A stretch of DNA of 64,000 nt from Perkinsela sp. CCAP 1560/9 (Eukaryota > Protista > Euglenozoa: Kinetoplastea): positions 1,922,001 to 1,986,000 of the forward strand of contig CBFFSA010000001.1 of assembly GCA_965644495.1 (NCBI GenBank). Direction: 5' to 3'. Below, one piece after another: positions 6,318-64,000 of this stretch (position 1 is its first letter; every line of letters starts with the position of its first letter). Both the position numbers and the translations under genes were made by a program. The notes under the pieces are model-generated. The model was not told where the DNA came from. It did no database searches and saw only the letters and a list, made by a program, of their open reading frames with translations.

Positions 6318-7277
6318 TTACCTACATAACGTCACTCTTCAAACTTTAACAAACAGGTTTTCGAATTTCTTCGGACATTCTCACCGTACAACCTTTCTCG
6401 GCCGCTTGTTCAACTTTTTTGCTGTCTTGGTGACCTCCGCGAGGCTGAGAAAATCAAAAGAGTCGGTCGCCTTGTGGTATTGATGAATTAGACCATTCAT
6501 GTTTTCCACCGCTCCGTTTTCCCATGAATGGTACGGAGCGCGGAAATATGAATTGCAACGAAGCTTTTCATGCACCCGTTCATGTTTCGAAAATTATGTC
6601 CCGTTGTCGTATGTAATGGTACAAACTTTATACTTGTTTAACTCCTTTATAATTTGAAACTTCGTCCGCATGCTTTGATCGTAGCACACGTCGCACAACG
6701 AACCGACTCTTTCTCTAACACAAGGTCAGAATGTACCCTGAGTGATTTTTTCCTTCTACTAGGTCCGCTTCCCAATCCCCATACCGACGCCTCTTGTTAA
6801 CTATCTGAGGGCGAAGACGGATGGGGACTCTGTTTGGGATCGTTGGGCGACCTCAATTGAAGCGACGCCTATAAGGACGCTTGCCACGAATCCGAAGGGA
6901 CTTGGAGAGCTTCCCGCTGTCGTCTTTGTCGCGTGCCACATGACGATAAATAGTGGTCACAGACGGTGAAGCCTGTCAGCCAACAACTAAGGTGTTGGCT
7001 ACCTGTTCGGGGCTGTGAAGTTGTCCTAAGCACTTCCTCCATAGACCCACGGATAAACCGGGGACGCACAGCCTTGCTTACCAGGCGGCGCTTTGACATT
7101 GTGTGCGCGGCTGACTTCGTAACACCGACCCCGTTTCTTGTTACGGGCCAGCTCACGGCTAACGGTGTTATGGGATTTACCGATAGCAGTGCCAATCTCA
7201 CGCCATGTCGCGCCTGCCTCAAACATCTCTTGTATGGTGACTCTGTCTCTTTGCCCGAGCCTCTGATATTTTGACAT
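6318..7277 (-). pseudogene. IS30-family transposase, frameshifted and with stops
   Basis: N-terminal HTH YQRLGQRDRVTI...IGKSHNTVSRELARN; core IPNRVPIRLRP...GDWEADLVEG; C-terminal PYHSWENGAVENMNGLIHQY...LNKRPRK; ends VTLCR*. Confidence 0.88.
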
Positions 7278-7301
7278 GAGGAATAAAGAAAAAAACAATT
7301 A

Positions 7302-7613
7302 CTATCCCCCCCTATTTAATAGGGCTACGTGTCACCCCCCCTTTAGTAGGGCTATTTTGTCTGGAAGGCCAAAAAAAATTCGGGGAAAGTGCCAATAAAT
7401 TGTCGAATGCGCCGCGAAGCGGCGGTTTTTTTTTCCGTATCTACTCCAACAACCACAAGTGTATCAAAAGGGAGCAGGAGCTTGTTTCACAACGATAAAA
7501 AAGGCGCTGCGAAGCGGCGCCGATTTTTTTTCTTTCACATTATTTTCCATGCCCTCCCCCTTTATTAGGGACTTTTGCCCAAAATCGGAGTCCTATTAAA
7601 TAGGGGGGGGTAG
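7302..7613. mobile_element. MITE with TA flanks, containing two GCGAAGC mini-hairpins
   Basis: TA|ctatcccccctatttaatagg ... cctattaaatagggggggtag|TA. Confidence 0.8.
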
Positions 7614-8074
7614 TAGAGTACTGGTATGTGTATACTTGGAGTATACAGTATAGATATTGGGATTATAAAAATATTAGTAGAATAAAATTTACAAAAACAG
7701 ACTTTTGGTGCACTGGATATGATAATCCACCCTCTTCAGGTTCCAGTCCATGACGCTCGCCCAAGCGAGCAATCGCCGTGCCTCGCTTAATAATGTGAGC
7801 TACATTCTGTATATCTTTTGTTTTCGAAGAAATAGGAAAGACCTGAAGAGCACATTAAGCAGTTTCTCATGGATATCGCTCCTCTCAATACCGAAGATCC
7901 CTGGTTGCCGAAGATCCCAGACCGAAGATCCCTGGTTGGGATAGGAAATTCAATCCAATTCTCGGGCGGAATTTTAGCCATGCAGCACATCAACGTAAGT
8001 AGCCAACAATATTCATTCTACAGAATTGCATCGACATGAAACGTCATTCTAACGTCGAAACTGTGTCTATGGAG

Positions 8075-8300
8075 GGGGGCATACCGCACGAAATTTCTTT
8101 TTGAAATTATTTCTTTCGAAATTTCTTTTTGAAAAAATTAGTTTTCGAAAAGAAAGCCGCAGAGGGGGTAGCCGAGGGCTTGGCGCACATTTTCCACCCC
8201 CTTACACGGGGGTGACCCCCCCCCGAGTACCCGCAGGACGGGTTAGCCAAGTACGGATTAGTTAGGAATAAAAAACTAATAAAAAATTCGAGGAGGGGCG
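8075..8300. repeat. Internal arm of the foldback element family seen at 33201-34109 and 44545-44860
   Basis: ggggggcataccgca...ggggtagccg...cttggcgc.cattt.ccacccc...ccgcaggacgggt shared among the three sites. Confidence 0.75.
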
Positions 8301-8379
8301 GCATCCCTCGTAGTCTGATGCGCAACTATCGGAACTGACTTCTTCAAATTCTTCGTGGGTGGGAAATCCTTAGTTGTCC

Positions 8380-8814
8380 TTAATGCACTTCATGATGTTC
8401 ACGAAGCGACTCTCTCGAGACTGTTCGCTGCCATCGTGGGTATCCCCATACTTTACGCTCCGCAGTGCGATGTTTCGCTGCAACCAACGTTGTCGCCCCA
8501 AAATTATAGTGTTGGAGTCGTACCCAACACTTAATAGTGCTGTGGACACTCTCAGCACCATTAGTACGGTACCCCTTCTCGTTCACAAACTCCCTACTAT
8601 GATTCACGGAGTAGCGGCAACAAACTTGGTCCAAACCATTATAAGCCCCCCAATAGTCGGTCACTACCACGGATCGCGCACTGGCATGATGGGGAATGAT
8701 GAAGCCATGTAAGGTAGGCGTATCACGACGATTCACCAATTTCCAATGGGTCCGCCCCGTTTTGCCAGTATCACGAGGTTCCGTGGCGGTTGATACGTCC
8801 CGATACCTTTTCAT
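8380..8814 (-). pseudogene. Merlin/IS1595-family DDE transposase C-terminal fragment
   Basis: VVTDYWGAY...VNHSREFVNEKGYRTNGAES motif. Confidence 0.85.
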
Positions 8815-9206
8815 GTATTTACTTTTTTTTATAAAGTGGATCAGTGTTCTACTAGGATCTATTCATTTGTCGTTTTTCAAGGTTTGTAAAGAGCACAAAA
8901 ACGTTACAAAACTTAACGGGGCAATTTTTTTGAAAAAATCAAACGTTTTCCGCACTTTTGTCCCTATCACCCTTAGAGGTCAGAGCAAAAAATCGAAAAA
9001 TAATTAAATTTTAATTCGTAATCCAGAAAAGGGTAAAAAGTAGGTGTTCAGTAGGGAGTGCTACGTGCTACAGTATCGTATCCTATGTATTGTAGCTTAC
9101 TGCAGCAAATCAGCTTGTATACTTGCACTTGTTAGCATATTTGTTGAAGCACATTTATTTTGCAGTTGCAACGGAGATACGACTTAGAGATATATCAGTT
9201 TTACCC

Positions 9207-10055
9207 ATGCGTGTGGCGCTTTTTGCAGATTCTTCTCGGAAACCACAAAAAGCAACGCGTTCGCTCTTACCTCAAGAAGTTCAGCTCTCTGCGTTTGTGT
9301 CGAACTTTTCCAAAACACATAAGACGTGGAACGCTCACGTACAAGCATGTGAGTGGAGTGGGGTAACGTGCGATACGCATAAAAGGGTCGTTACTGTGTC
9401 CTGGTGCGGGCGTGCCCTCCGTGGCGACCCTTCCTGGTGCCATTTACCCGACAGCATTCATACGTTAGAGCTGGGGAGACTTAATTATGGTTGCGGAAAT
9501 CAACTCTCGGGACCGATTCCCACCGCCTTGTTTCCCCATCCCTCTGTACGGATTGCTCTGGACTATAATGTGCTATGCGGGAAAGTTGAGCTTCACGACC
9601 TTCCCGTGAATCTGCAAAGTTTTGACATAAGTGGGAATGCTTTGGAAGGAGAGCTTGCGTTAGAGCAGCTGCCAACGTCCATTAGTATGTTTAACGCCGC
9701 AAACGCGGGATTCAGTGGCGGGATCTCATTATCATTGATGCCGGCAAATATTAAAAAGTTGGTTATTTCTCTCAACCGATTAAGTGGTGAAGTGGATCTT
9801 CACGATCTCCCCACGAGCTTAGCTGAGCTCTACCTGCATAAAAATAATTTCTCGGGGGCGGTCGATCTTAGCCGCCTTCCCTCTAATTTGGAGCGGTTGA
9901 CAATTGACACGAATCATTTTTCTGGAGTCCTTGATCTGTCTAGCCTCCCAAAGAATCTAAAGTATTTGAATTATGCCGAGAACAAGTTCGATCATGTAAT
10001 TGTAAACGATGATAAGGAACATCATTTTAAAACGGGTTTGGTAACGACAAAGTGA
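9207..10055 (+). CDS. LRR protein, divergent member with 8 LRRs
   Basis: MRVALFADSSRKPQKATRSLLPQE leader, ACEWSGVTC cap; first ATG at 9207. Confidence 0.9.
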   Translation: MRVALFADSSRKPQKATRSLLPQEVQLSAFVSNFSKTHKTWNAHVQACEWSGVTCDTHKRVVTVSWCGRALRGDPSWCHLPDSIHTLELGRLNYGCGNQLSGPIPTALFPHPSVRIALDYNVLCGKVELHDLPVNLQSFDISGNALEGELALEQLPTSISMFNAANAGFSGGISLSLMPANIKKLVISLNRLSGEVDLHDLPTSLAELYLHKNNFSGAVDLSRLPSNLERLTIDTNHFSGVLDLSSLPKNLKYLNYAENKFDHVIVNDDKEHHFKTGLVTTK

Positions 10056-10436
10056 TGATTATTGTTGACTATGCTGTAATCCCCGACATTAATGCAGTCA
10101 GTAAAACCGCTTTCGATTTTGATTGTTTATTCTTAGTTTTGTGCGCTAACATTGAGTAAATACCAACGTTGCGCTAGTGATGCGTGCTAGTAGTGTACCC
10201 GTCCGCAGATCTGCATCTGGGTGTGGGTAGCGGAGAGAGGTTCGATAGTGGGAGGGGGGGTTCACTGACGTCGAGACCCACGCTTTCGTTTGAGCTCGAG
10301 AAAGCGCAAAACTGAATAACAATCCGGTGTAATTCTTGGAGGAAGGACGAATGGAGCTCTGAAGCGGGGGTCCTTTGTTGTGTAGCAATACCGGAAGCGC
10401 CCGAACCGCTCTCTTCATCTGAATCAAGCTCTGAAG

Positions 10437-10645
10437 ATGAGTGACCCCGGACCCAAAGCGATCAAAGCGGAACGAGCGGCACAAGATGACGGCGAAGCCT
10501 TTGTCTGGGCATTTCAATTCGGCTTATTGCCCGCCAAACTGTCCACACGAACATGCGGATGTTCTCACAGACCCCCTTAAACAAAAAATACACTTTATGT
10601 GCACTACAGAGGGTTGCGCGTTTCAATTGCATTACCATTAAGCAT
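10437..10645 (+). pseudogene. Possible Merlin-type N-terminal zinc-ribbon fragment
   Basis: Frame-shifted reading AFVWAFQFGLL...CGC...FMCTTEGC resembles 48325-48645. Confidence 0.35.
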
Positions 10646-10829
10646 GTCCGCGAGTGTCGTGAGGGCAAACAGGAACTTGGCGACTAGGAGAGGTCAGTGG
10701 GGTGAGGGGAGGCGTGATTTCGGAATTTGCACTTTTCAAGGTGTGAGACCTGCCTTACCCTCGTAATTTTTACTACATGAACTGCAGATGAAGCGATCTT
10801 GTTCATCCCACCACTGTTCACAAACCGCG

Positions 10830-11053
10830 TCATCGTGTCGGAGGGCGACGTGATTGTAGAAGGCCTTTCACTGCCCTCCATGGGACGTTGTACTCCAAGC
10901 GCATCCGTCCGCGGGACGAACACGAGATTCTGTGGGCATGAAGAGAGGAAGTGTGGTTGCGGAGAGATTACTTGAATGGAGAAGAAACGATCGTCGTGCC
11001 GAATACGGGGTATCGGGTCCCGGATTCTGTTCCACTCCGCCTCGCACGAGTTC
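10830..11053 (-). pseudogene. Non-LTR-retrotransposon-like N-terminal fragment: 2A-like motif followed by a degenerate C2H2 finger
   Basis: ELVRGGVEQNPGP (GGVEQNPGP at 11041-11015), then PADGC...*KAFYNHVALRH in the same frame. Confidence 0.55.
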
Positions 11054-11432
11054 GTTTTTTTTTTTTAAATTGACCAAATAAAACAATTATTTGGTTTAGG
11101 GGATAGAAAAGGGGGTAAACGGATGAAGGATGGATTTTTCCCTCTATGGAATGTGATACTGTTTCTGTAGCTACAACTTGCTCAGCAAAGTTGGCACACT
11201 CATCGAGCTTCATTGTAGTACGGGATCGTATGGTTGGTTGGCAAATCAGGGTGAAAGCGGGTAAATGGGTCAATGACCCGGGTAAATTACCCCCGTTTAC
11301 CGCAATGTAGGTAATTACCCATTTACCCGACAGGGATATGAAATTTGGGTTAAAATTTCGCAATTCTCGCCGAAACATCGAGCCCTTTTACCCCCAAAAA
11401 TAGGTTGTTCATGATTTTTTCACGATTTTTAT

Positions 11433-11538
11433 TTTTTAGTGGCTTCGTTAAACGCGGAGGTAGTTTTCAACGCGAAGCGCGCAGCATGAGTGACTTCTAA
11501 GTTGAAAACAACCACCGCGTTTAGCGAAGCCACTAAAA
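11433..11538. repeat. About 100-bp palindromic hairpin repeat, copy 1 of 5
   Basis: Arms tagtggcttcgttaaacgcgg / ccgcgtttagcgaagccacta around the conserved core gcgaagcgcgcagcatgagtgacttcta. Confidence 0.85.
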
Positions 11539-12111
11539 AGGAAATTTTATTTTTTTTGCTATGCTCCTAAAAATACTCTATCTTAAAAGATATGATATCA
11601 TCATCACGACCATCCTGGAGACCATCATCCGGGCCTGGGAGCGCATGTTCGTCACGTTCAACTCTTTTAAGAGTTCATTTCGAGCCTGTGTGTCCGTAAG
11701 AAGACCGTTTGATGCACTGGCGCGTAGCTAGCGCCCCCACCTTTCACAAGACTTTTAAAAGCGGGCCGGGGGGCGCGCCACGCGCATTGTACAACAAGAT
11801 ATACTGACACTGTATTCTCAATCAGGGTACCAGGAGGGCTGCGTAACATAGTGTAGGAACTAAAGGCACTCATAAGGGAGGATGTATACTCACTGCACTC
11901 GAACAATGTGTACTCATGTAGTATACTCATGTTACATTGTACTCATATACTCGTTGGACTTACTGCGGCAAGTAGGAAGACGTTAATAGTATTATCAAAT
12001 AGAAAGAAACTAGAAAATCAGGCTGTCAGGATGGTCCTCGTCGAGCATCGGGGAGCATCCGACCTCGGTCTGCGAAGTGCGCATAACGTTCCCAATGAGT
12101 AGTCATGCATT

Positions 12112-12310
12112 ACTTCCTTTCATGGGCATCGGTCTCCTTTAACCCCGACGGTGCAAAGCTAAGGTCGGATGTACTACCCGCTCCCCCTTTATCCAGGCGT
12201 ATGTACCCATCCTTCCATCACCTTTCCACATTTCTCTGAGAAGAAATGTGGCCCCGGGCTTTGGACCGGAATTGTGGGGTTAAAGGAAACCGATGCCCAC
12301 GAAAGGAAGT
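12112..12310. mobile_element. Small MITE-like element with 35-bp TIRs
   Basis: acttcctttcatgggcatcggtctcctttaacccc ... ggggttaaaggaaaccgatgcccacgaaaggaagt (2 mismatches). Confidence 0.75.
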
Positions 12311-13877
12311 GTTTTCACCTACACTGTAAACTGTGGGCCACGGCATGATTGTAGGCTGCAAAAACCATACTTTCACACATTTTCATTCAAAATGTATGCG
12401 TAATGGAAGTTATATTTCATGCAGGGCAAAACCTGCAGGGTGGGTGCCTGTCGTACGACGATACGTCGTGTACGACGACCGGTATCAACGGCCATTACGG
12501 CGCAGTCAACGCCTGTCGTACGTAGGGATTGAGGACCACGCAGCGTGGTCCTCAAGGGAGGTCCTGCAGCGCATGGGAGGGGGTGAAGGAGGCACTGGAC
12601 TTCCACTGGGGGGGGGCGTCGTTGAGAATCTGCAAGAAGCCTTTGGGCTACACAAAGTCGTGGAGAGGCTCTCCCCTGCGATCATCCAGCAGGGGCATTC
12701 AGCGCGTCTGACGCGCTGCACGAGTCTGCGAAGCGGCGGTCCCTATTCAACAGAAAGAGGAGTTTCCGGCCCTAGCGCCATCCGAAAACGGACATACATA
12801 AAAGTACATATAAGGTTAAGAGCATGCCCGCTTCTGGGAAAGGGAAAGATGAGCTAGGGAAAAAGTACAACAAGGTATAGAAACTGTATTGAAAAATAAA
12901 GTAAATAAAGATTTAGTGTTCATTTCATTGGGTAATTGCTCTAATCCAGGATGACAGAGGGTTCTCCTCCAGTGTCGATTCAAGAAACAACATACAAGTG
13001 TACGTCTCCGCCTTTTTGGTTTTTTCGTCAAATGACCCCTGTACTCTTCACGTGGTTTTTTAAAGTACTTTCCCTTCTTTGTCCCCACACGATCTTCGAC
13101 ACAGAACATTCGAGAAAACTACGTCTAGAGTTTCCTAATTGTAAGATCAGCGTATTGTAAAATACACGTTCGGGTTTGTAAAATATTCTTCCTCTGCATG
13201 ATGATATTTTAATTAGAAGTTTGAACAGTTACATGAAACAACTTTTCGAGGCTTTGCATGGACTGATTTATGAAATGCATCTATCTCCGCAAAGTTTTCT
13301 TACGACACATCATTTTTACACATAACCCGTCTCTAAAATAATGCAACCATTCCCTAGGGACCTATCAATTTATTTTGAATAATTACAAGCGTAATCTTAG
13401 AGAACAAACCTCTTAGAAGGTCAACATCTTAGACCTGACAAAATGTTTATTTCGATTCTAAAATTCTTTGAAAAGTATTTTTTGTACCACCAAAACTTAT
13501 GTTTACCGACCGCTTTTTCTACTCTATCCGACAACCGATGTCCAGCTCATGCGGGAGAGTACATACGCAGTACAAAAACTGTACCTTTCACTTTCATGGA
13601 AGAGTTTCAAAATCGCAAGAACAGAAGTGTACAATTTTACTCTTACTGAGTTACCCCATTGGATTGTAAAGTATTAAATGGGGGTTCACAGAAGGCTTTC
13701 GATTTTTGTTCTTTCTTCACATTTACTGGTCACTCAAGTCTTTGGTGAGTCTCTAAATCATTCGTTCTCTCAAAACTGAATTCATCGACATTTTTCTCAC
13801 CTACCTAATAGTGGCTCCTAAAAAAGCGCAAGTTAAATTTCAAAAAAAGAGTAAATCTCTACTCCTTTCACACCTTC

Positions 13878-14567
13878 ATGGTTCATCCTTTCAATACGAT
13901 GCGTGCAATTTTACTTACGAATGCAGATATTTTATCTCGACCAAGTAAAGTGCGAGGCGCTGTCTTACCACAGGAATACACATTGTCTCGCTTTGTGAGT
14001 AATCTTGCGTCCCTAGAGGAATCGTGGACAGAGGCTACTCCCGCATGTGAGTGGCGATATGTGTTGTGTAATGCGGAAAAGCAAGTAACTTCACTGGGCT
14101 GGGATAATAAACTGTTTGAAGATGAGACAGATGAAGGTGGTTCGGAATTTCCCATTTTGGATGGTCCACTACTGTGGGAGTACATCCCGCATACGCTAAT
14201 TCTCTTTACAGCATACGTGCAGGACTTATCAGGCCCTGTGCCGCTTTCCGTACTACCCAATTGTTTAACAAAGTTTAACATTCGTACCAATGAATGCAGT
14301 GGGCAATTAGATCTGATACATCTACCCTCTGCATTGGAAATCTTGGATTTACGTAACAATCAATTTGAAGGGACAATTGATCTCACGCGTCTTCCTGCGC
14401 ATCTAAAATGTCTCTATCTGGGAGGCAACAATCTGTCTGGTAGCTTGGACTTGACACACGTCTCCGAAAATGTGCAGAATATAAATCTGGAACATAACTT
14501 CTTTAACGTTCAGCGGACTGTGCCCAACAATGTAGAATTTGGAACTCAAGCTCTCCCTGGACGTTGA
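13878..14567 (+). CDS. LRR protein, subfamily C-like, 5 LRRs
   Basis: ADILSRPSKVRGAVLPQEY; acidic insert after the cap. Confidence 0.9.
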   Translation: MVHPFNTMRAILLTNADILSRPSKVRGAVLPQEYTLSRFVSNLASLEESWTEATPACEWRYVLCNAEKQVTSLGWDNKLFEDETDEGGSEFPILDGPLLWEYIPHTLILFTAYVQDLSGPVPLSVLPNCLTKFNIRTNECSGQLDLIHLPSALEILDLRNNQFEGTIDLTRLPAHLKCLYLGGNNLSGSLDLTHVSENVQNINLEHNFFNVQRTVPNNVEFGTQALPGR

Positions 14568-14829
14568 GCGGCACTGCGTGGTTTTCATGCAAATTGTTGT
14601 AAATGACGCTTTATTTATACTGTTGATGACACTAACATTTCATCTGACGTTTCATAACTTTTTTTTCGGTAAATATTCTGGTCTTATTGGTTTCTTTTGC
14701 TTCCAGATTTTGCCGCGCATAAATTTCTATCTCAGTTCTATGGAATTTCATAAATGTTTTGAAGGATTCTGTAATTTTATTCCTCAAATAAAACTTTCAA
14801 GACTTGAGACTGTTGTGTTTTAAAATAAC

Positions 14830-15453
14830 ATGTGTATGTATATTCCCTCACGTCTATCCCCCCAGGTTCATATTAAAACCTGTGACACTCCAACCGCTAC
14901 AAAGGAAGCGCCCCCGAAGAAGGTACGGGGTACTTCTCTTCCGGTGGAATATGACTTTGAAAAATTCATACAAAACGTCGAGCGTCCAGATGCTTCGTGG
15001 CACACGCACACGCCCGCGGCTGAGTGGGCAGGTATATTCTTTGCGCAAGGAACGTATGATATCGATTGGGCAGACTATGGCTTGCGCGGCTCATTATGCT
15101 GGGAATATTTGGCTACACTTCCCATAAACAGTGTTGTCGTCCCGGAGAACGAGCTCACTGGTCATCTTCCTTTGGAGAATTTACCATCCAAACTCACACG
15201 GTTTCATGTTCATTGCAACGCGCTTAGTGGTCCAGTGGAGCTCCGCTTCTTGCCTTGTGGGCTACGGGTTCTGCGACTCGATTACAATCAGTTTAGTGGA
15301 GAGGTACACTTTGACGCTCTCCCCGCAAGCCTTCAAGAGTTAGGCTTACAGTGGAATACGGCACTCGTTGGAGAGTTAGATCACAATATGTTGAGTGAAA
15401 GGCATCACGTGTTGTCTCTACGTCTCAACCAGACAGGAATTAAAGAGAATTAA
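14830..15453 (+). CDS. Short LRR protein, 4 LRRs
   Basis: PKKVRGTSLPVEY leader, WHTHTPAAEWAGI cap lacking the cysteines. Confidence 0.88.
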   Translation: MCMYIPSRLSPQVHIKTCDTPTATKEAPPKKVRGTSLPVEYDFEKFIQNVERPDASWHTHTPAAEWAGIFFAQGTYDIDWADYGLRGSLCWEYLATLPINSVVVPENELTGHLPLENLPSKLTRFHVHCNALSGPVELRFLPCGLRVLRLDYNQFSGEVHFDALPASLQELGLQWNTALVGELDHNMLSERHHVLSLRLNQTGIKEN

Positions 15454-16559
15454 CGATACCCCTGTTCTATACAAAATCTGTTATTTCTCTCTTTATTGAA
15501 CTCAAAATTTGATTTTGAGCGAAACGAAAAAGACTTCTAGCATCATTTCGCCGAAACATTATCTTCTGTGTGAAACGGTTCCTGTCGGAAGTTCTACCAG
15601 TCTACCCGATGCTCCTATTCATTCGGAACCTGAAGACATTCAACAATACGCCCAGTGTTTTAAAGATGATTTACTCAGAGAACACGAGGTAGAACTTCTT
15701 GAGTCTCTGTATGACGCAGACGATCTCTGTGCGCATCAGATATTGACGACTGGCGTTGTATCTGCTTATGCGACGTGAAAAGAAAGCCCACAAAAAAAAC
15801 AACTGCACTCTACGTATCTAATACGTAAATCATTGGGTTTGTCAAAGCGAACGACGCATTCTTTTAATCCCACTGTGTCTTGATCTTTTTTGTGATCCTT
15901 TTTATCTCTTCCTATGCACTTCAGAAGGAATAAACCTCATATGTATTCTTAACGTTTCATATCACCAGAAGTCTATGCAGATGGAAGAAGATGAAGCTGA
16001 AGAAGATGATGCTGTCTGGTTTTCCCGATTCACTTAAGAAAGGGATCGCGCGTGAGCCGCCAAGCAATTGACATTTTTTTTGTTGGCTTGATCTTCCGAG
16101 TCGTTCAACATTATCTTTTCTAATTTTTCTGGTGTTACTGTGACCCCATGTTGTTGAAACCGATGAGACACTAATAGGGAACCGAACTTGCATGCTCACG
16201 CCCGGACGGACAGTCGGGTACTTTCATTTTCCGAATGCGGAATAGGGGAGCCGGCAGGGGCACTCACCGTGCGCTTATTAGTTATTAAATGGGGAGTCAT
16301 TCATGGCTCGCAGGAGGCCTTCGTGTTGATGTACCCCGCACCGAGGATTCGCTAGAAAACGAAGGCGGACTTTCTGGGTACTAATCTACAAAGTTTAAAT
16401 CACCTAATTGTACGTACTGATCCGCGTTTTCTGCATTTTCCCACGTAATCTTCAAAATTTGAGTGCTCTAAAATCTTGTTTTTGGTCGATTTTCTAGCCG
16501 TCGTATGAACACTAGGGGGTCCCTATGAATAATAAGGCGGCAAATCGCTTCGCTACGAA

Positions 16560-53661: not shown

Positions 53662-53740
53662 TATGTATGTCTATGTGTGAGTATATCTACTTGTATGTCT
53701 GATTCTAGAAATTCGGTGACAGGATCTAATAAGATTTACT

Positions 53741-54001
53741 TCATCGCCGGGTTCTGTATGAAGAACAATACCCCAGATTAATGACTTCTATTCCACACGC
53801 AAGTTTGAAGCCCATGGGTAAGACCCGAGGCCGTAAAACCCGGCTCCCTATTCGTACGCAGCACGCGTTACCAAGTGCTGCAGATACGGGAATTTGATAA
53901 TAATAATTTCGCACATCGGCGTGTAGGAAATATGTCTGTGTTTGTGAACAGTCGCCTAAGGAAACTAGTGCCCGAATTATAGTTACAAACCGGTGACACA
54001 C
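53741..54001 (-). pseudogene. Reverse transcriptase fragment, DIRS-like
   Basis: ADVRNYYYQIPV ... RVLPMGF match RT motifs A and B. Confidence 0.65.
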
Positions 54002-55131
54002 TTTTTAACGCAATTTAATGTACGTTTTTTTAATTAACGTACTACCTAGTAGCATTAATTAACGTAATACAGTTACCCCCCTTACTTCGCCTCCCCCCTT
54101 ACTTCACCACAGTTAGTCACTGGACGTGTGGTGAAGTAAGGGGGATGTCAGATTTTTCCCCAGGCAACTTACCACCTCTTTACACAGCCGGAAGGGTGCA
54201 CTGCAACCGACCGTTACATCGGGGTAAGGCGAGGCAGAGCCCACGCCCAGTGGTCTTCAAAGGAGGGACACAGATGGCGCACAAAGATCGATGCACAAAG
54301 GTTCTTGGTGCAACTTTTTTGGTGAAGACGACGCTGTCATACCGGGATTTTAAACCACAGTCCGGTTTAACGTTCCGAGGGGGGATGTTAACGGCTACAG
54401 GAACTGCTAATGCTACTTTGCTGCAGGAATAATAACTTTTGAAGATTGTCTTGGGTTCATCGACGCAACGGGTTGGTAGCAGCACGTTGTTGCCGCCTTG
54501 TACTAACGAAATCGGTAGAGGACTTCGGCCTCGAAACTTCCAAATCTACATGTACATGTGAAGAGTCTGGCCTGCCAGTGACCGATCGGAGTAACCCGGA
54601 ATGATTTAGATTTGTTGAACGATTTCTAATTCAGAACGATTTTCTTCTATGTGAGTTTCATCATCGCTTTGATCATAAAGTTGCGCCACAGCGTCTTGTA
54701 GTTCTTAAATTGGTGTTCAATAGGTTATGTTCTGCGATATCATTTGAATTTTACGATGTAGGAAATTTTCATGGGGAGAAGGTTCAAAACGCATGGGACA
54801 TCGTAGACAAGTTAAAAGAAACATAAAAGATAGAATGCAACACGAGGTATTACAACACTCAAGAAAAGGAAAATATGCTCAATGTCGATAGCATAGTGTA
54901 CTTCAATAATTTGCGGATTTCCGAGAGAACCATAAATTGATCGAACTTTGAATCACTTATTCACCCCCCTTAGAGGGCTGAAACCACCTGGGTTTGCCTA
55001 GGTTTGCCTGGGTTTGCTAATTTTCAATATTGTATTAGGCAACTCATTTTCTTCCTTGGCGAAAAGCACAGTATATTCTTTAATGCTCTTTTCGCACAAT
55101 AACTTATTTTTCTTAGATTCACCCAAAAAAA

Positions 55132-55302
55132 AATATTATTCATGATCTTTTGGCGGTTTTTCTTTTTTAGGCTTTTCGTTAAACGCGAAGGCAGTTTTAA
55201 ACACGAAGCGCGCAGCATGAGTGACTTCTAAGTTGAAAACAACCACCGCATTTAACGAAGAGCCTAAAAAAGAAGAATCGCCAAAAGATCATGAATAATA
55301 TT
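55132..55302. repeat. Palindromic hairpin repeat, extended 170-bp copy 5
   Basis: aatattattcatgatcttttggcg...cgccaaaagatcatgaataatatt around the conserved core. Confidence 0.88.
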
Positions 55303-55512
55303 ACTGTGACCTTTTACAGCGGAAAAACATCAAACCCCCACTTTATACTTCGTTACTGTTCAAAATGGGCGAAGTATAAAGGGGGGATCACAGTAATATT
55401 AGTAGTTGATACTGAAAGTAATGCTAATTTCGTATGATTCGAACATTTCTTTAAGCGTACATGTAGAACACTATTACCCTATTGTCGAACCCCCTACATG
55501 GACCCCGAACTA

Positions 55513-55808
55513 CCGTAGACCCCCCCAGTAATAGAATCGATTTTGGGCCAAAATGGCCGAATCCTTGTTACTGGGGGGGTATGCTTTTTGGGTGAGAAAG
55601 GACCTTTTTTATTCATGAGTTCGTTGACTTTCAGCACATCCAACCCCGCAACCACGCCATTCGCTCCCTCGCAACCGCCCTCACCCCGCCCAAACACCCC
55701 CTCCCTCCTGCAACGACCCTCCCGAGCCAAATCTTTGTTACTGGGGGTCAGCCGAAAAAGGGTCGAATCCCTTTTACTGGGGGGGTCTATTACTAGGGGG
55801 CTCTACGG
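55513..55808. mobile_element. MITE, CCGTA-TIR family
   Basis: TA|ccgtagacccccccagtaatag ... ctattactagggggctctacgg|TA. Confidence 0.85.
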
Positions 55809-56422
55809 TAGTCTCCGTACTCGCTCCCTACACACTTCCTGCACCCCCTGTACCCGACTGCACCCCCTAGACCCGACTTCCACCCCCTGGAACCCCCACC
55901 CGGATCCTCCAGCGAACTCCATAGCCGAAAAAACTCCAAGTACCATTGCCATTGGTCTCTCTTGGGACCTGACTGGGTTTGCATTTTACTGGTTTCAGCC
56001 CTCTTACTTCACCACTCCCCTTACTTCACCAAAAAGTACGGGTTTTGGATCAAAAAATGGGGGCTAAGTAGGGGGGATAACGGTAACTCACGTAGAATTA
56101 CGAAATTTGTTGAATTTTACTAAAAGAAAACTAAAATTCGGGCCGCTTCGCGGCGCGTGTATTTCAAGGGAATAAAGATAAAGGGTACCTTGAAGGGGAC
56201 ACTACATATTCCAAGTATAACGTAACATAACCACCACGCGGTGCAGTGTTTTTGACGTGGAATCCCCCCTGACAGGCAGAATACGGCAGATTAAGCGACC
56301 ACCTCCCATCACAGCACTAGTTTTACTCCATTTTTTGGAATTAAAAAGAAAGGAATTGGAATCGTCCATTTCATTTACATTTAGAGAGTAGTACTTTGAA
56401 CTAACACTCGTACTTCAACACA

Positions 56423-57124
56423 ATGCAACGTGCCGTACGCGTGGCCGATGTCCCCTCTCGACCCAGTAAGGTTCGAAACGCGGTTCTCCCACAAGAATAC
56501 AATATGTTTCGACTACTGAGTAACGCCAGTTTCGCTGAGGAGTCATGGACCGAGAAAACGCCCGCTTGTGTGTGGAAGCATGTGGAGTGTAACGATGAGG
56601 GAGAGGTGACAAAGATACAATGGCGCAAATACGAAAGCGCATATGGAGACAAAGAGGAGAGAGTCTCTCTACAAGGTTCACTGCGATGGAATTTCCTACC
56701 CGACACTCTGATCTCCTTCGATGTTTCCTTGCAGGAGGTTTTGGAGGGGCACGTAGACTTGGCGGTACTACCGGCAAGATTGAAAAAGTTTGACATTGGT
56801 AGCAATCAGTTTAGCGGAAGCTTGGATTTAACGCATTTGCCGTCTACTCTGAAAGATTTGCGTTTGGGATGGAATCGTTTTGAAGGTGAAGTTGATCTTA
56901 CACGCCTCCCCGATACTTTGAAAAATCTCGACCTGTGTCATAATAGTCTGTGCGGAAAACCTGATCTCACAAAGCTTCCGAAGGCGCTAATGTGGGCCAG
57001 GCTCCTTGTCAACAATTTCGTCATACCTGACTTTATTCCGGAAGGTGTACACATCAAGCCGTATGTGAGTAGAAGACGACCCTGTGGATTCAATCCGTAC
57101 AAAGTACGATATAACCATAAATGA
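56423..57124 (+). CDS. LRR protein, subfamily C, 5 LRRs
   Basis: ADVPSRPSKVRNAVLPQEY; close paralog of 62134. Confidence 0.92.
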   Translation: MQRAVRVADVPSRPSKVRNAVLPQEYNMFRLLSNASFAEESWTEKTPACVWKHVECNDEGEVTKIQWRKYESAYGDKEERVSLQGSLRWNFLPDTLISFDVSLQEVLEGHVDLAVLPARLKKFDIGSNQFSGSLDLTHLPSTLKDLRLGWNRFEGEVDLTRLPDTLKNLDLCHNSLCGKPDLTKLPKALMWARLLVNNFVIPDFIPEGVHIKPYVSRRRPCGFNPYKVRYNHK

Positions 57125-57375
57125 TGTATTCTAGCTGTACGTGTACTCTACTTGTATTAAGAAGACTAAGGCAGAAAGTTATTTCTTTTTCTAGTACTTG
57201 TAAATATTTTCTAGTAGTTGTAAATATTGTTTGAAGGCCAAATGGAGGATTTGCAATGTATGTTTTAAACGGAAGGGTGTGTGAAATAAAACTTTGAATA
57301 AAAAGTGGGATTGAACGAATAGTGTACTTTTTTTAAATTTTTATGAAATCCTTTTTCGTGCTTCGTATGGTGATA

Positions 57376-57460
57376 CAGGGGTGAAAACTTTCATCTGGGG
57401 GGTTTAAAAATTGTAAAATTTTCTCAATTTTGTAGAATAATAACGCAATTTGGCGTATTT
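57376..57460. mobile_element. Solo terminus of the CAGGGG-TIR family
   Basis: TA|caggggtg...ctggggggtttaaaaattgtaaaatt. Confidence 0.6.
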
Positions 57461-57774
57461 TGAGTGTATTCAGATGTTCAATAACATCCCTGAGGAACAT
57501 TTTGAAAAACTCAAAAGGAAACATTGTACTCAGAACAGCTTTAAAGACCTCTTTCTTATGGTGGAACTGTTCGTTGTTGGTTGGTGGGGAGGCAGAAGGG
57601 CAGCCGGATCGTCTCGGAGCGAAATCATTACGGCACCTGGGATGTAAGAGGACTCGAAGTCCCTGGCGTTCAGCGCAAGAGCTATGTATTCGACATCCGC
57701 TTCCGCGTTTCTACTACTTGGTAGGATGGCTGCTTTTTCAAAAAGGGGGAGAATGTCCGTTATTCCCGGCAACA

Positions 57775-57897
57775 AACCCCCACCCGGATTCTCCAGCGAA
57801 ATCCATAGCCGAAAAAACGCCAAGTACCTTTGCTATTGGTTTCTCTTGGGACCTGACTGGGTTTGCCTGAGTTTGCATTTTACTAGTTTCAGCCCTC
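57775..57897. mobile_element. Right end of a Harbinger-type MITE, homologous to 55890-56003
   Basis: aacccccacccggat.ctccagcgaa...cttgggacctgactgggtttgc...gtttcagccctc|TAA. Confidence 0.75.
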
Positions 57898-58055
57898 TAA
57901 ATAATATTCACGTATTTTCCAAAAATGATTCTCTTTGCAATCTCTTTGCACTCTCTGCACATGAATGAGAAGTACATTCTGCCACTGGAATGTGTATGCA
58001 AAAAAAAATGTGTATGCAAATTTTCGTAATGTACTTCTTCCTTGTGTTTCAACTA

Positions 58056-58370
58056 AACCATGTTCCAGGATAGTGTATACACATGCCCACTTAGTAAACC
58101 TAGTAAGTATACTAAGTGTCCCAAGGCCACTTAGTATACCTCCCCCCCCCTCCCAGCAACAGGAGCGGGAGAAGTCCCTTTTTTAGATGCGACAGAGCAA
58201 CTTTTCTAGCAATCGTATTTTTTAAGGCCAAAACACTATATTTTCTAGCAATGGTAGATAAGAAACGCGCCGCGAAGCGGCGCAAAACTCTTTTTTTGCT
58301 TTTTAGACAAAATTTAGTATACCGTACCCACTTAGTATACCTACTAGGTATATTATCCTGGAACATGGTT
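58056..58370. mobile_element. MITE with TA flanks and a GCGAAGC hairpin
   Basis: TA|aaccatgttccaggata ... tatcctggaacatggtt|TA. Confidence 0.8.
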
Positions 58371-59196
58371 TACATCGAAAAGGCCTGGAACTATTCTCAA
58401 AATTACAATAGTCCTTCGCGTAGCAGAGACTGATTTGGGCTAATTTTTCTCTTATTGGCTTTTATTGGCGAGTGAGATTCCGAAAATAGATTCTATCACT
58501 GCAGGAATTAGGATATTAAACGTGTTTGCAGCGAACACCGGATGACGTCTAACTTATTGTACTCTTCGGTAGGCATTTTTAATCAGGACATCATTCGTTA
58601 GGCAATGTGTGGAAGAAGGAAGAAGGAAGGTCTGCGCCATGGTTCTTAGCCAACGGCGTCATTATTGCTGATGCAACCTTGCATAGGTGGTCCCAGACCA
58701 CGTTTTTGAGCGCCCCTTCCATCCACTTGGGATTCAGGGGACCTTCGCCTCCTTGCACAACTTCCTTCAGAAGTTCACAATCAGTTTCTTGTGTGAGGGC
58801 AAAATAAATTCGGTTGCGTATGACGCGTCCTTTGCTGTTCAAAAACTTTTCATTCTGTAGACCCACACATATCATAAAAAGCTTGGAAAGAACTGGGGTT
58901 GAATACGTCCTAATGGGACCCTAAAGTGGGGGGTGTTTCTTTTCTTTTTCTTTGGTCTTGGTTGGTTTCACATGCTTTTCTCCCTCATCTAACTCCCGCT
59001 TTCGCGCCTGCAGTATTACAGCAACCGAGAGTAGTACGCACCCATTGATCAATGGATCTTCATAGCTTCCTTCTTGTAGACGTTCTGCACCTTATCTGCT
59101 TCTGGTGTACTAGCACCTATGCCTTCCATGACAGTGGATACAAAATTCAATTCCTGGGACCCATTTTGGTGCAAGGCAGAATAAACTTCCTATAAA

Positions 59197-59530
59197 TTAA
59201 TGCTGGATGCGCGCTTTGCTTCTTCCGCTCATCTGAAACACCCATGCGTCAGCCTTTTCTTCGATGCAACTGACAAAATGAATAGTCCCATACAGAGAGC
59301 AATGTTTTGTGATGCAGAAGTTTTTTCTAAGACGCATTTTCTTCTCATCGAACGAAGTCCAGTGTGCTTCCAGGACTTGTTTTCTATAGTATAGGGAACC
59401 AAATTGTTTGTTTGGCGGTGGCATTTCACTAATTTCATTAAAGACCGTGCGAAGTGTATTCTCATGACTGTAGAAAAGATTACCCGACCGTCAGTGTCGA
59501 TAGCCCCCCATAACACCATCACCTTTGTTC
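59197..59530 (-). pseudogene. Possible Tc1/IS630-like transposase fragment
   Basis: VMVLWGAIDTDG segment. Confidence 0.35.
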
Positions 59531-59579
59531 TCCATACATCTCAGCTTGTCTCGATTGATTATTTTGATACGTTCACATA

Positions 59580-60404
59580 ATGTACGGCAACTACTGCATC
59601 GATGACGGATCCGACGATTTACGTCGAGGCAAAGTTACCTCTCTGCTACTGCCCCAAGAGGGTATGCTGGAACGTTTTATTTCAAACTTAACTGGAAAAC
59701 ATAAATCCTGGCGTACGACGAAGAAGAATATGTTTGGACGTGTCAAACGTCTATCCGCATGCAATTGGAAAGGCGTGACATGTGATGAGCATCAACACGT
59801 GACTCATATTATATGGGATTCAATGAATCTATTGGGCACCTTGCAGGGGAATTTTTTGCCGTGTACGTTGTCTTATTGTGACCTTCTCAATAACAGACTG
59901 GGAGGATCGCTTCAACTTCACACGTTGCCATCACAGCTTAGATACTTAAGATTGGCCGTGAACACTTTTATCGGTGAGTTAAACTTGACTCAGTTACCGA
60001 ACAGATTGCGTTCCCTTTGGTTGAGTGACAACCAATTTGAAGGAAATGTTGATCTCACGAATCTGTGTTCTGGATTACAATACTTAAATCTTCGAGGGAA
60101 TAAACTTTCTGGTGCCGTCGAACTTTCTCATTTGCCAAAAAAATTAGAATACTTGCAATTGTCGAAGAACAGATTTACAGGACCGCTCTCGCTGCAACAT
60201 TTACCTCCATCGCTTTCTACCTTTAGCGCGCATGGCAACTCTTTCTCTGGTTTAGTGAAGTTTGACCGTCTTCCTCCAAGCTTGGTACATCTCTCTCTGC
60301 ACCACAACGCGGAACTTTATGGCGAAATTGACAAGTCAGTTCTTCCTAAGCTTTTACAGCCTATTGAATTCTGGAATACAAACATTAAATTCGGTACAAA
60401 GTGA
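59580..60404 (+). CDS. LRR protein, subfamily B
   Basis: IDDGSDDLRRGKVTSLLLPQE; KKNMFGRVKR; close paralog of 18004. Confidence 0.92.
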   Translation: MYGNYCIDDGSDDLRRGKVTSLLLPQEGMLERFISNLTGKHKSWRTTKKNMFGRVKRLSACNWKGVTCDEHQHVTHIIWDSMNLLGTLQGNFLPCTLSYCDLLNNRLGGSLQLHTLPSQLRYLRLAVNTFIGELNLTQLPNRLRSLWLSDNQFEGNVDLTNLCSGLQYLNLRGNKLSGAVELSHLPKKLEYLQLSKNRFTGPLSLQHLPPSLSTFSAHGNSFSGLVKFDRLPPSLVHLSLHHNAELYGEIDKSVLPKLLQPIEFWNTNIKFGTK

Positions 60405-60527
60405 GTATAACGAAACGTTTATGATATTGATGAATGAAAACAGATGTGGCATAAATTCGTGTGTGATAGAAAAGTATGTTTGTAACTTATTGGTGACGCG
60501 AGGTTTATCACCGTATTCCTTCTTATA

Positions 60528-61861
60528 CAGGGGTGTAAATTTGTATGTGGTGGGGGTCTAAAATTCGTAAAATTTGGCCAATTGTGGAAAATAATAGCGC
60601 ATTCGAGAGCTCTCGAACAGGGCTCATGAACGCAACATGGTCGCGATAGGCACAAGGGGGTATTGCCCCCTCGACAAAGGGACCCCAAATGCGATTCGCA
60701 ACTTTCTAAAGCACGGGAAAAAATAGAAAAAATAATAATAATTGCAGTTTCCGCCGTTCTTTTCAATCACAATACGGCATCTCTTACGAAAGCTCTTCAT
60801 AGCGTTTTCAAAGGCTATAGAATGTGTCGTTTGAATATCTTGAAACGCTGCTTCGATCGCAATGATCAAATCTGTACGATTTCTAGGGGCCAAGCCATTT
60901 TTGAAATTGTCCATTATGGACCATAAATTTTCAACGGGCATGAGATCAGGTGATTTTGCTGGCCAAGGAAGAACAGTAATTCCTGTCTCTTGAAAGCTTG
61001 TCCTGGCCAGATTGTGCACCGTACAGTTATCCATTGCAATAACGCTAGAACGGTGCCGCTTAAGGTAAGAAATTAACCCTCCACGCTTCTTCATGGCTTC
61101 ATCAAAAATAGCCCCCGTCACTGTACCTCGGTTTCCTTGAGAACGAACAGAAGGAAAAACGTGAAGGTGAAACCCATGCTTAAGGCTCGCTGCCATCCAA
61201 ACCATAACACCATTCCCCCCATGCCATGCATCCAATTCACCTTGCTGCTCCTTGGGAGCGTCAGTTTTGCGGCAGAGGTACGTGATGTGCCCCCCACTCT
61301 TCCCACAGGTAAATTTTTTTTCATCCATCCAAATGATATTGGACAGTTCCGCGTCACTCCACGTTAGCATTTCTTCACAGAAACGTACTCGTTTCTCTTT
61401 ATGCACTGAGGTAAGTGCAGGGGATTTCCGGACTGTGCGCAAGACGATGCCATATGATTTCATGTGGGTCGTCAAAGTTTGACGAGAGCAAGTGAACCCA
61501 AGATTTTCCATTAACCGGTGGAGCTCACTCCAGCTCCTGATGCCATAGGGTTGATCTCGAACACCTTCGTCTATCGCTTTCAAAGCAGCCTCACGTAGTT
61601 CAGGTGTCACAGCGATGTTCGTTGGGGCGTGTTTCTCGTTCTTGGAGTTTACTTCTCCAGTATCAAGATAGCGCTTTAGTTACAGTTCACAGTAGCTCCA
61701 TGAACTTGAAAATTGCGCGCGGTTAGGGAAAAAGACTGTGTTGCTTCGTAATCGGCAACAAGAAGCATGCGCCAGCTTGCTTTTATGTGCCCAGGCGAAG
61801 AATAAGCCCTTTCGGAGTGCTTATGTTCCGGAGATCGTCCAAAATCCCGTCGTTGTGGCAT
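60528..61861 (-). mobile_element. Tc1/IS630-like transposon; DDE ORF 60624-61610, N-terminus disrupted near 61676; only one TIR found
   Basis: WMDEKKF, MDNCTVH, WPAKSPDLMPVENLW; TA|caggggtg TIR at 60528. Confidence 0.9.
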
Positions 61862-62133
61862 GAATAAGGGCAAAAAACACAAAAATTGTGAAAATTGCAG
61901 GATTTCGTTTTCCAAAAAGCTAAGTTTTTTTATGTGCATAAGTCAATGCCTTTTCTTTCGCCAATACCAATTTAGAAGGTTTGTAAAATCGCTCAACTCC
62001 AAAAAAACATTTGAAGTATATTTTTTTGGAAAACAAAGGGGGGAAAAAGGGGGAGATTCCACCGAAATATGAATATATGAACCCGAACAATGGTCTAATA
62101 TGGATTTTAAAGAAATTCTAGTCCTTCACGACA

Positions 62134-62826
62134 ATGAAGAGTTCTGTACAAGCTGCTGATGTCCCATCTCGACCGAGTAAGGTGCGAAACGCGGTCCTGC
62201 CCCAAGAATATAATCTGTTTCGACTACTGAGTAATGCCAGTTTTGAAGAGGAATCATGGAGCGTGAAGACGCCTGCGTGTGAGTGGAAGTTAGTACAGTG
62301 CAACCCCGAGGGACAGGTCACAAACCTCAATTGGCGCAAAGACACAAGTCGGTATGCGAAGGAAGAGGAAAATGTCCGCATAAAAGGTGTACTGCGATGG
62401 GATTTTCTCCCCAATACGCTGCTCTCTTTTTCTGCTTCAAATCAAGCGTTTTTGGAGGGGCACGTAGACTTGTCGGTACTACCCGCGGGATTAAAAAACT
62501 TTGATATTGGTACGAATCGATTCAATGGAGGGTTGGATTTAACGCATTTGCCATCTACTCTGGAAAAACTGGTTTTGAATTTCAATCTATTTGAAGGTGA
62601 AGTTGACCTTACACATCTCCCCGACGGTTTGAGAATTCTCGACCTTGCGTACAATACTCTGCGTGGAGAACCTGATCTCACAAAGCTTCCGGAGTTTCTG
62701 ACGTGGGCCAGACTACTTCACAACAATTTCGTCATACCTGACTTTGTTCCGGCATGTGTTCATATCAAGCCGCATGTGCCAAGGAGTACTCGCCATTGTG
62801 GGTACAGCAGGTATAAGAAGAAGTAA
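62134..62826 (+). CDS. LRR protein, subfamily C, 5 LRRs
   Basis: ADVPSRPSKVRNAVLPQEY; close paralog of 56423. Confidence 0.92.
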   Translation: MKSSVQAADVPSRPSKVRNAVLPQEYNLFRLLSNASFEEESWSVKTPACEWKLVQCNPEGQVTNLNWRKDTSRYAKEEENVRIKGVLRWDFLPNTLLSFSASNQAFLEGHVDLSVLPAGLKNFDIGTNRFNGGLDLTHLPSTLEKLVLNFNLFEGEVDLTHLPDGLRILDLAYNTLRGEPDLTKLPEFLTWARLLHNNFVIPDFVPACVHIKPHVPRSTRHCGYSRYKKK

Positions 62827-63261
62827 TAGGCATGTACCCGTGTGTATTGTGCTTGTACATTATACGTATTCGTACATTGTATACGTACTTGTATATTATA
62901 AGTACGATTTATACATGTTCGTGTATAATTTATGCATGTATGTGTATGTTTACATGGGATTTGTATGTGTACATTGTACAGTAACTAACAAAAGTGTTCA
63001 AATGTTTTCACAAATTTTAATGTTTTTATATTTTACAAAAGAGATGCAGAGGATAATGCAGTAGTATATTACAGTAGTGTAGGCTGGAGTAGTGCTTACA
63101 TTCCCACGTACTTAGACTTCATCAACGATCTTACAATAAAAAACTATGAAAGATATAATGCGATCCCAACACTTGAACACTTTTTTCACTTTTTTGAGAT
63201 TATTTTTTTTTGACCAAAACTTTGCCTTACTTCACCCTTACCAAACCAAAATGACCAAAAC

Positions 63262-64000
63262 TTAATACTTCGTAAGTCCCCCCTTCGCCCTAATTACTGC
63301 CCTTAAACGACGGGGCATGCTGCGGACAAGAGGAAGACATGCACTCGGAGGAAGGCCTGCCCACGCTTTTTGGGCGCGTTCCCAAAGTTCCAACATTCCT
63401 ACGGGAGGATCTGGATGATCCGCAGTCGACTTTTTGAGCTCGCCCCATAGGTGCTCTATGGGATTTAAATCGGGAGACTGCGGGGGCCAGTCTAGGACAC
63501 ACAATTCTTGTAAACGAAGGAATTCCCGGGCCTTCTTACTCGTGTGCTTTGGATCATTATCTTGTTGGAAGATGATCCGGTCCTTCATGACTTCCAACTT
63601 GTGGAGGGAAGGAGACAAATTCTGTTGAAGTATTTGAACGTACTGTTCAGCATTCATGTTGCCATGAACCAGAGCAATGGAGCCCACGCCGTGAGCCATC
63701 ATACACCCCCATACCATGATGGATCCCCCACCGTACTTCACGGTGCTGTGTGTATTTCGCTCTGAAAGTGCTTCCCCAAAGCTCACCCACGCCCACCGGC
63801 TGCCATTCGACTCGAAACGGCAGATCTTACTTTCATCAGTGAAAAGCACATGGCTCCAGTCGGCGTTCGTCCAATGCTCATACTTCTTTGCAAAGGCAAG
63901 ACGTAGAGCTTTGTGACGCTTCGTAAGGTGGGGTTTCCGTAATTTCTTCTTCCCCTTCAAACCACGCTTCCGAAGGGAAACCCGAATGGTTTGGGGCGAA
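63262..64000 (-). mobile_element. Tc1 DD34E transposase, continuing past the window end
   Basis: FTDESK, QQDNDPKH, WPPQSPDLNPIEHLW; 34 residues between D and E. Confidence 0.93.

What the first reader, a model, noticed from the sequence alone, without database searches (positions are those of the whole stretch)
6318..63960. Strand segregation: LRR genes sense, TE coding remnants antisense (flamenco-like TE trap or polycistronic filtering)
Seen: 13 motif-recognisable TE coding remnants are on the - strand (IS30, three Merlin, 2A/ZnF, Harbinger-type, Ulp1, Pif1, hAT, three Tc1-like, RT), as are weaker candidates. Only about 3 small doubtful fragments are on + (10437, about 12500, 48325). 13 of 16 gives a one-sided binomial P of about 0.01 if orientation were random and insertions independent. 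Established: DNA transposons usually insert in either orientation, and uni-strand piRNA clusters such as flamenco accumulate antisense TE fragments. Inference: one long + transcript could yield both LRR mRNAs and antisense TE silencing RNA, or sense insertions are purged.
Basis: partly seen in the sequence, partly recalled or inferred. Interest (0 to 1): 0.8.

Follow-up and report, generated by a model that had tools for sequence, protein, structure and literature searches.

The report
Transposons face against polycistronic transcription
In this trypanosome relative, whose genes lie in long one-way blocks, about two thirds of transposon genes genome-wide point against the direction of reading, most likely because copies pointing with it get switched on and are weeded out; the window is one strong example of this, not a special silencing locus like flamenco.

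Summary
All 19 LRR genes in the window are on +. Of the transposon coding pieces, 20 lie on - and one (a Merlin fragment) on +; two doubtful + pieces got no support. The flamenco reading fails. The window sits inside a block of at least 264 kb where housekeeping genes are also on +. The genome is a kinetoplastid: 273 host-gene anchors show only 12 strand switches. Outside the window, coding pieces of six families lie antisense to their block 159:74 (68%, P=3e-8), in + and - blocks, near and far from LRR genes. The bias differs by family: YR 17:1, Merlin 35:9, Harbinger 22:7, IS30 20:10, Tc1 47:26, hAT none (18:21). RT elements lean sense (8:19). Non-coding elements show no significant lean. 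Transposase start codons follow host-like pyrimidine tracts. Best reading: read-through transcription plus trans-splicing expresses sense copies, and selection removes about half of them. This is the 'safe haven' idea of Lopes et al. 2021, offered there on a few Merlin copies. Oriented insertion is not excluded. No RNA data could be obtained. An unchecked scan note (s1-717730) saw the same on another contig.

The parts
1496..62823 (+). Array of 19 intronless LRR genes, part of a one-strand gene block of at least 264 kb (inferred polycistronic unit)
   Evidence: flanking housekeeping ORFs also on +
14..811 (-). Likely Harbinger accessory ORF remnant (before the finding's start; not in the 20:1 count)
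   Evidence: 27% to the ORF beside a DDE_Tnp_4 transposase in the upstream flank
6393..7298 (-). IS30-family transposase remnant, broken
   Evidence: NF033563 over cut-off; 82-90% to a + copy 37 kb upstream of the window
8304..8835 (-). Merlin transposase remnant, 3' part
   Evidence: PF12762 E 2.6e-9; 86% to L029/L036
10441..10641 (+). Doubtful Cys/His-rich fragment, unsupported
   Evidence: no Pfam hit, no homologue among held sequences
10769..11064 (-). Repeated ORF piece with a 2A-like motif (element class not established)
   Evidence: 56% to a flank ORF, also on -; no Pfam hit
16028..16258 (-). YR-retroelement gag remnant
   Evidence: 40% to the gag beside a PF00589 gene in L001
24979..26330 (-). 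Two repeated ORFs of an unnamed element; a homologue lies next to a Tc1 DDE ORF in the flank
30496..31068 (-). YR-retroelement gag remnant
36354..36645 (-). Tc1-like transposase piece
   Evidence: 71-79% to a DDE_3-positive flank ORF
37295..38256 (-). Harbinger-type transposase remnant
   Evidence: PF13359 E 1.7e-4, below cut-off; copies in the flank
38767..38931 (-). Merlin piece
   Evidence: 46% to the 52029-52484 piece
39178..39478 (-). hAT N-terminal piece
   Evidence: 41-47% to hAT pieces
43243..44351 (-). YR-retroelement gag ORF and start of pol
   Evidence: 38% to L001 gag, 36% to L001 pol; family of 38 matches
45733..46306 (-). Ulp1-like remnant, perhaps one element with the Pif1 piece
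   Evidence: 37% to a flank ORF on +; no Pfam hit
47064..47576 (-). Pif1-like helicase remnant of a giant-ORF element
   Evidence: about 89% over part of its length to 2257-2975 aa ORFs; no Pfam hit on the piece itself
48325..48645 (+). Merlin N-terminal piece, the one confirmed sense remnant
   Evidence: 26.5% to L038/L039 Merlin, E 5e-4
48812..50751 (-). hAT transposase remnant in three frames
   Evidence: PF05699 weak; 72-76% to 690-900 aa ORFs
51604..51907 (.). MITE-A, non-coding control; a second copy at 55511-55812 faces the other way
52089..52760 (-). Merlin remnant
   Evidence: 28% to L034, E 8e-10
53025..53664 (-). Tc1-derived small element with inverted ends, carrying a transposase scrap (53321-53440)
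53789..53980 (-). YR-retroelement pol piece
   Evidence: 59-62% to pol ORFs in the flank and L001
59200..59528 (-). Tc1-like piece
   Evidence: 39% to the DDE_3-positive flank ORF
60524..61861 (-). Tc1-like element, frameshifted near its start; pyrimidine tract before the ATG
   Evidence: PF01498 and PF13358 over cut-off
62979..64000 (-). Tc1-like element running off the window end
   Evidence: PF13358 E 1.3e-15
44536..44918 (.). Piece of an abundant non-coding element (over 500 motif copies), second control; other pieces at 33573-34130, 11387-11543, 55118-55304

Best explanation
Orientation filter of a polycistronic genome. Shown: host genes form long one-strand blocks; transposon coding strands of five of six families lean against the block direction genome-wide (68% overall); transposase ATGs follow pyrimidine tracts like those of host genes. 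From established kinetoplastid biology: a block is transcribed by read-through and cut into mRNAs by trans-splicing at pyrimidine tract plus AG, coupled to polyadenylation upstream. Inferred: an element landing in the block's direction has its own acceptor used, so it makes transposase mRNA and disturbs processing of its neighbours, and such alleles are lost more often. An antisense copy is silent and drifts. The 74:159 ratio means sense copies persist about 0.47 times as often, if insertion is 50:50. TE-rich LRR arrays merely hold many inserts, so the pattern is visible there.
For: Blocks: 273 anchors, 12 switches; 21 of 21 independent WD40/MRP genes agree with blocks drawn beforehand. Kinetoplastid marker MRP over cut-off. 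Bias 159:74, CI 62-74%; + blocks 100:41, - blocks 59:33; 25 of 29 blocks; 89:29 for the four first-tested families after collapsing 5-kb clusters. The same direction in four DDE superfamilies and a tyrosine-recombinase retroelement, whose integration chemistries differ. Non-coding elements pooled 56:48, different from coding ones (P=0.014). Pyrimidine share 40 nt before 15 TE start codons 0.67, housekeeping 0.64, background 0.49-0.50. Strand composition does not track the bias. Same idea proposed in PMC8101967.
Against: hAT shows no bias, and its long-ORF copies are 12 sense: 6 antisense. No clear age trend: long-ORF copies 37:11, broken 87:41, P=0.27. The MITE control is weak (28:20, CI 43-72%, includes 68%), and the other control is probably moved by a different enzyme. 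No RNA evidence. Transcription direction is inferred from gene strand.
Confidence: 0.55

Rival explanations
1. Oriented insertion: the elements integrate preferentially against transcription or the co-directional replication fork, or at strand-skewed target motifs; no selection is needed.
For: Family-specific strength (heterogeneity P=0.002; YR 17:1, hAT none) and no age trend. RT elements show the opposite lean (19 sense: 8 antisense), so oriented targeting does occur in this genome. MITE-A does not exclude a 68% lean.
Against: Five unrelated integrases would have to share one direction. The abundant non-coding element is 28:28. Host-like pyrimidine tracts point to an expression difference between orientations.
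Confidence: 0.25
2. Diffuse trap: since every block is transcribed, an antisense insert yields antisense RNA that pairs with sense transcripts and feeds Argonaute; antisense copies are favoured, not merely tolerated.
For: Two PAZ-PIWI gene types in five copies. T. brucei AGO1 carries siRNAs from retroposons, inverted repeats and convergent regions (PMC3447711).
Against: Only one weak RNase III hit (E 0.02; kinetoplastid Dicers are divergent, so absence is not shown). The C7 protein has Ser where the aligned PIWI proteins have the last catalytic His. One or two antisense copies per family would suffice (inference). RT elements, the main siRNA source in T. brucei, lean sense here.
Confidence: 0.12
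3. Flamenco-like dedicated cluster: this LRR array is a special uni-strand locus collecting antisense fragments.
For: The window is more extreme than the genome (20:1 against 68%, P 0.003-0.035); bias near LRR genes is 71%, farther away 63%.
Against: That difference is not significant (P=0.19). The locus codes for 19 proteins. The bias is genome-wide. The upstream flank holds six sense pieces among 24. Flamenco is non-coding and its bias is Gypsy-specific (PMC10643416).
Confidence: 0.03
4. Artefact of chance, duplication, truncated hit lists or wrong block polarity.
For: Lists are capped (Tc1 150 of 392 candidates, RT 150 of 1072). Coordinates were copied by hand. About half of the hits fall outside anchored blocks.
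Against: The searches are strand-blind. The result is stable from 60 to 400 kb anchor gaps, without duplicate-looking contigs, and by block sign test P=1e-4. Polarity errors would shrink the bias, not create it.
Confidence: 0.05

Closest known systems
'Safe haven' antisense Merlin copies in Perkinsela sp. and Bodo saltans (Lopes et al. 2021, PMC8101967)
   Same: Same lineage type, same direction, same proposed cause: sense copies are always expressed in the polycistron and eliminated faster.
   Different: There a few old Merlin copies, not counted. Here 233 placed copies of six families, with family differences, non-coding controls and many long-ORF copies.
SIDER retroposons in Leishmania directional gene clusters (Smith et al. 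2009, PMC2689281)
   Same: Orientation depends on the polycistronic direction; antisense SIDERs are over 3-fold enriched in spacers between poly(A) and splice sites.
   Different: SIDERs are extinct short retroposons, 4-fold sense overall and co-opted in 3' UTRs; here coding DNA transposons and YR elements are antisense overall.
flamenco and flam-like uni-strand piRNA clusters (van Lopik et al. 2023, PMC10643416)
   Same: TE fragments mostly opposite to one long transcript.
   Different: Those are discrete non-coding loci with Gypsy-specific bias and proven piRNA output; this is a coding block showing a genome-wide trend.
Antisense bias of intronic LTR/L1 insertions in vertebrate genes (from my own knowledge, not checked here)
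   Same: Sense inserts are depleted because their processing signals harm the host transcript.
   Different: Acts in introns through cis-splice and poly(A) signals; here between genes, through inferred trans-splicing.

Membership tests
flamenco-type uni-strand piRNA cluster | TE fragments antisense to one strand | tested here: met
   20:1 in the window
flamenco-type uni-strand piRNA cluster | Discrete locus whose bias stands apart from the genome | tested here: not met
   68% genome-wide, 25 of 29 blocks, near vs far from LRR genes P=0.19
flamenco-type uni-strand piRNA cluster | Non-coding precursor | tested here: not met
   19 LRR ORFs of 209-319 aa on the same strand
flamenco-type uni-strand piRNA cluster | Bias driven by Gypsy LTR elements | tested here: not met
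   Bias lies in DDE transposases and YR elements; RT hits lean sense
flamenco-type uni-strand piRNA cluster | PIWI-bound small RNAs from one strand | not testable with these tools
kinetoplastid polycistronic transcription unit | Long runs of unrelated intronless genes on one strand | tested here: met
kinetoplastid polycistronic transcription unit | Kinetoplastid host | tested here: met
   PF09387 MRP E 7.6e-7, over cut-off, 0 of 14 prokaryotic control genomes; one marker only, genus not tested
kinetoplastid polycistronic transcription unit | Spliced-leader gene array | tested here: inconclusive
   The published Perkinsela leader gave 8 scattered one-mismatch hits and no array
kinetoplastid polycistronic transcription unit | Pyrimidine tract before start codons | tested here: met
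   housekeeping 0.64 vs background 0.50; weak for LRR first ATGs, and the AG-linked score was barely above background
kinetoplastid polycistronic transcription unit | Read-through RNA and trans-spliced mRNAs | not testable with these tools
   no RNA runs obtained
safe-haven purging by selection | Insertion itself unbiased | tested here: inconclusive
   non-coding 28:28 and 28:20; no same-transposase MITE could be oriented
safe-haven purging by selection | Bias grows with age or depends on coding capacity | tested here: inconclusive
   long-ORF vs broken P=0.27; hAT P=0.20; YR P=0.34

The most novel reading that the evidence does not exclude
Because the whole genome is read through, every antisense insertion is a source of silencing RNA, so the genome acts as one distributed trap served by its PIWI-like Argonautes, and transposons have answered with host-like splice acceptors and mirror-image two-strand designs.
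Probability: 0.12. Interest if true: 0.75.

Novelty: new variant of a known kind. Interest (0 to 1): 0.42.

Why it matters
It puts numbers on an idea so far stated from a few copies, in a kinetoplastid rich in DNA transposons. Trypanosomatids have none (PMC12278014). If read-through transcription forces expression of every sense insert, that is a concrete and testable reason why cut-and-paste elements fare badly in these genomes. This genome offers hundreds of copies in six families, with hAT as a built-in exception. In eight searches of the open library I found no genome-wide count of this kind; subscription papers were not searched.

Tried and rejected
A 200-base withheld stretch just past the window end was left alone. 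Base composition as the cause was rejected: the most A-rich element is sense, and Merlin has no skew yet is 80% antisense. Comparing with a related assembly (L001) for private insertions failed: only about 7 kb is collinear. Orienting Merlin-derived MITEs failed: the ends are built of short repeats. The PF00589 list alone was too small, so the gag family was used. Pfam gave nothing for the 2A/ZnF, Ulp1, Pif1 and + fragments. The big protein search was not needed.

Full report
Setting. The window is G000:C1:1922001-1986000 of a 21-Mb genome in 110 contigs. Genes are intronless ORFs. The kinetoplastid guide-RNA-binding family MRP matches over its cut-off. Earlier scan notes call the organism Perkinsela-like; I tested only that it is a kinetoplastid. 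Perkinsela is reported to have strand polarity, polycistronic transcription and trans-splicing (PMC5601477).

Observation. A profile built from the window's LRR ORFs finds 19 genes in the window and 50 pieces in the 264 kb made of the window and 100 kb on each side. All are on +. The recognisable housekeeping genes in the flanks are on + too. So the LRR strand is the direction of an ordinary gene block. TE coding pieces were checked by Pfam, by family searches of the genome and by translated comparison with elements held from elsewhere. Within the finding's range, 20 pieces lie on - and one, a Merlin N-terminus at 48325, on +. The fragments at 10437 and about 12500 have no support. Three of the 20 (2A/ZnF, Ulp1-like, 24979-26330) are repeated elsewhere but unnamed. 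Several reference proteins came from the window's own - ORFs, which favours finding - pieces there; the family searches are strand-blind and also hit the window only on -. The upstream flank gives 18 antisense to 6 sense by hand count.

Genome-wide test. Block direction was drawn from LRR, kinase, helicase and Piwi hits: 240 thinned anchors with 12 switches. WD40 and MRP genes added later agreed in 21 of 21 cases. A TE hit was scored only if the anchors on both sides agreed and lay within 100 kb. The window and two duplicate-looking contigs were left out. Antisense to sense: Merlin 35:9, IS30 20:10, Harbinger 22:7, Tc1 47:26, YR gag 17:1, hAT 18:21; together 159:74, 68% (CI 62-74%), P=3e-8. 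It holds in + blocks (100:41) and - blocks (59:33), near listed LRR genes (107:43) and farther away (52:31). For the four families tested first it also holds in 25 of 29 blocks, after collapsing neighbours, and at gaps from 60 to 400 kb. Families differ (P=0.002). RT-domain hits lean sense, 19:8, unlike the rest (P=2e-4). A 1624-aa ORF with an RT hit sits in sense directly after a truncated LRR ORF in the downstream flank. Limits: hit lists are capped, coordinates were copied by hand, about half of the hits fall outside anchored blocks, and 'long-ORF' is a crude age proxy.

Controls. An abundant non-coding element splits 28:28. A 300-bp MITE splits 28:20, not significant, but with an interval that includes 68%. 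Pooled and folded in favour of a bias, the two differ from coding pieces (P=0.014). Strand composition does not follow the bias. Long-ORF and broken copies are biased alike.

Mechanism. The 40 bases before the first ATG of 15 TE ORFs are 67% pyrimidine, like housekeeping genes (64%) and unlike background ATGs (49-50%). Several of the 15 are related Merlin copies, and a score tied to a following AG was barely above background. The tracts suggest that the elements borrow the host's trans-splicing, so that orientation decides expression. I infer that sense copies make transposase and disturb processing of neighbours and are lost about twice as often. Lopes et al. proposed this for a few Merlin copies in Perkinsela and Bodo (PMC8101967). 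In Leishmania, antisense SIDERs are enriched in spacers though sense overall (PMC2689281). Oriented insertion remains a serious rival, given the family differences, the unbiased hAT and the missing age trend.

The trap idea. Flamenco is a non-coding locus, and the bias of flam-like clusters is Gypsy-specific (PMC10643416). The window meets only the orientation feature. The genome has three copies of one PAZ-PIWI gene and two of another. The best named matches of the first are animal PIWI proteins at about 27% identity, and it has Ser at the last catalytic position. There is one weak RNase III hit. T. brucei makes siRNAs from retroposons and convergent regions (PMC3447711). A diffuse silencing benefit is therefore possible but unshown. 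No RNA data were available.

Verdict. It is best read as the orientation filter of a polycistronic genome. The idea is published; the count, the family differences and the pyrimidine tracts are what this adds. Interest 0.42.

Noticed in passing
G000 C1:1791538-/1792891+, C1:2925113-/2926389+, C1:3079979-/3081354+: Head-to-head pairs of Tc1 transposase hits about 1.3 kb apart, two pairs with equal scores; the window's 63265 element scores the same as the first pair.
   Followed up: partly
window 44536-44918, 33573-34130, 55118-55304, 11387-11543: Pieces of a roughly 1-kb non-coding element with a 3' hairpin and over 500 motif copies; two motifs often sit about 509 bp apart. Giant Pif1-like ORFs of 2257-2975 aa may be its autonomous partner; untested.
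   Followed up: partly
G000 C1:1.33-1.69 Mb, 2.2-2.56 Mb, 2.97-3.37 Mb and contig ends: Most RT hits of two crude subgroups lie outside anchored gene blocks (7 of 43 inside, against 215 of 408 DDE hits): gene-poor, retroelement-rich stretches.
   Followed up: no
genome-wide hAT family: No orientation bias, with long ORFs (up to about 900 aa) in sense; unexplained.
   Followed up: partly
L043:1423-3159 (-): A 579-aa ORF joining a hAT N-terminal part to a Merlin DDE domain.
   Followed up: no
L003-L005 (G000 C7:656-681 kb): Three near-tandem copies of a PAZ-PIWI gene, with an intact IS30 between two of them; Ser at the last catalytic position.
   Followed up: partly
G000 C2:618-637 kb: Tandem array of twelve Merlin-domain units with a period of about 1.7 kb.
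   Followed up: no
G000 C13 vs C2, C21 vs C11, C100 vs C10: Contigs with identical hit scores at constant offsets; they look like haplotype duplicates in the assembly.
   Followed up: partly
L001 8633-16025 vs window 55994-62978: A related assembly shares only this 7-kb stretch at 97-99.5% identity; the neighbours differ, so the LRR array appears to rearrange quickly.
   Followed up: no
window 29717-29887: Tandem array of 19/39-bp units in a spacer.
   Followed up: no
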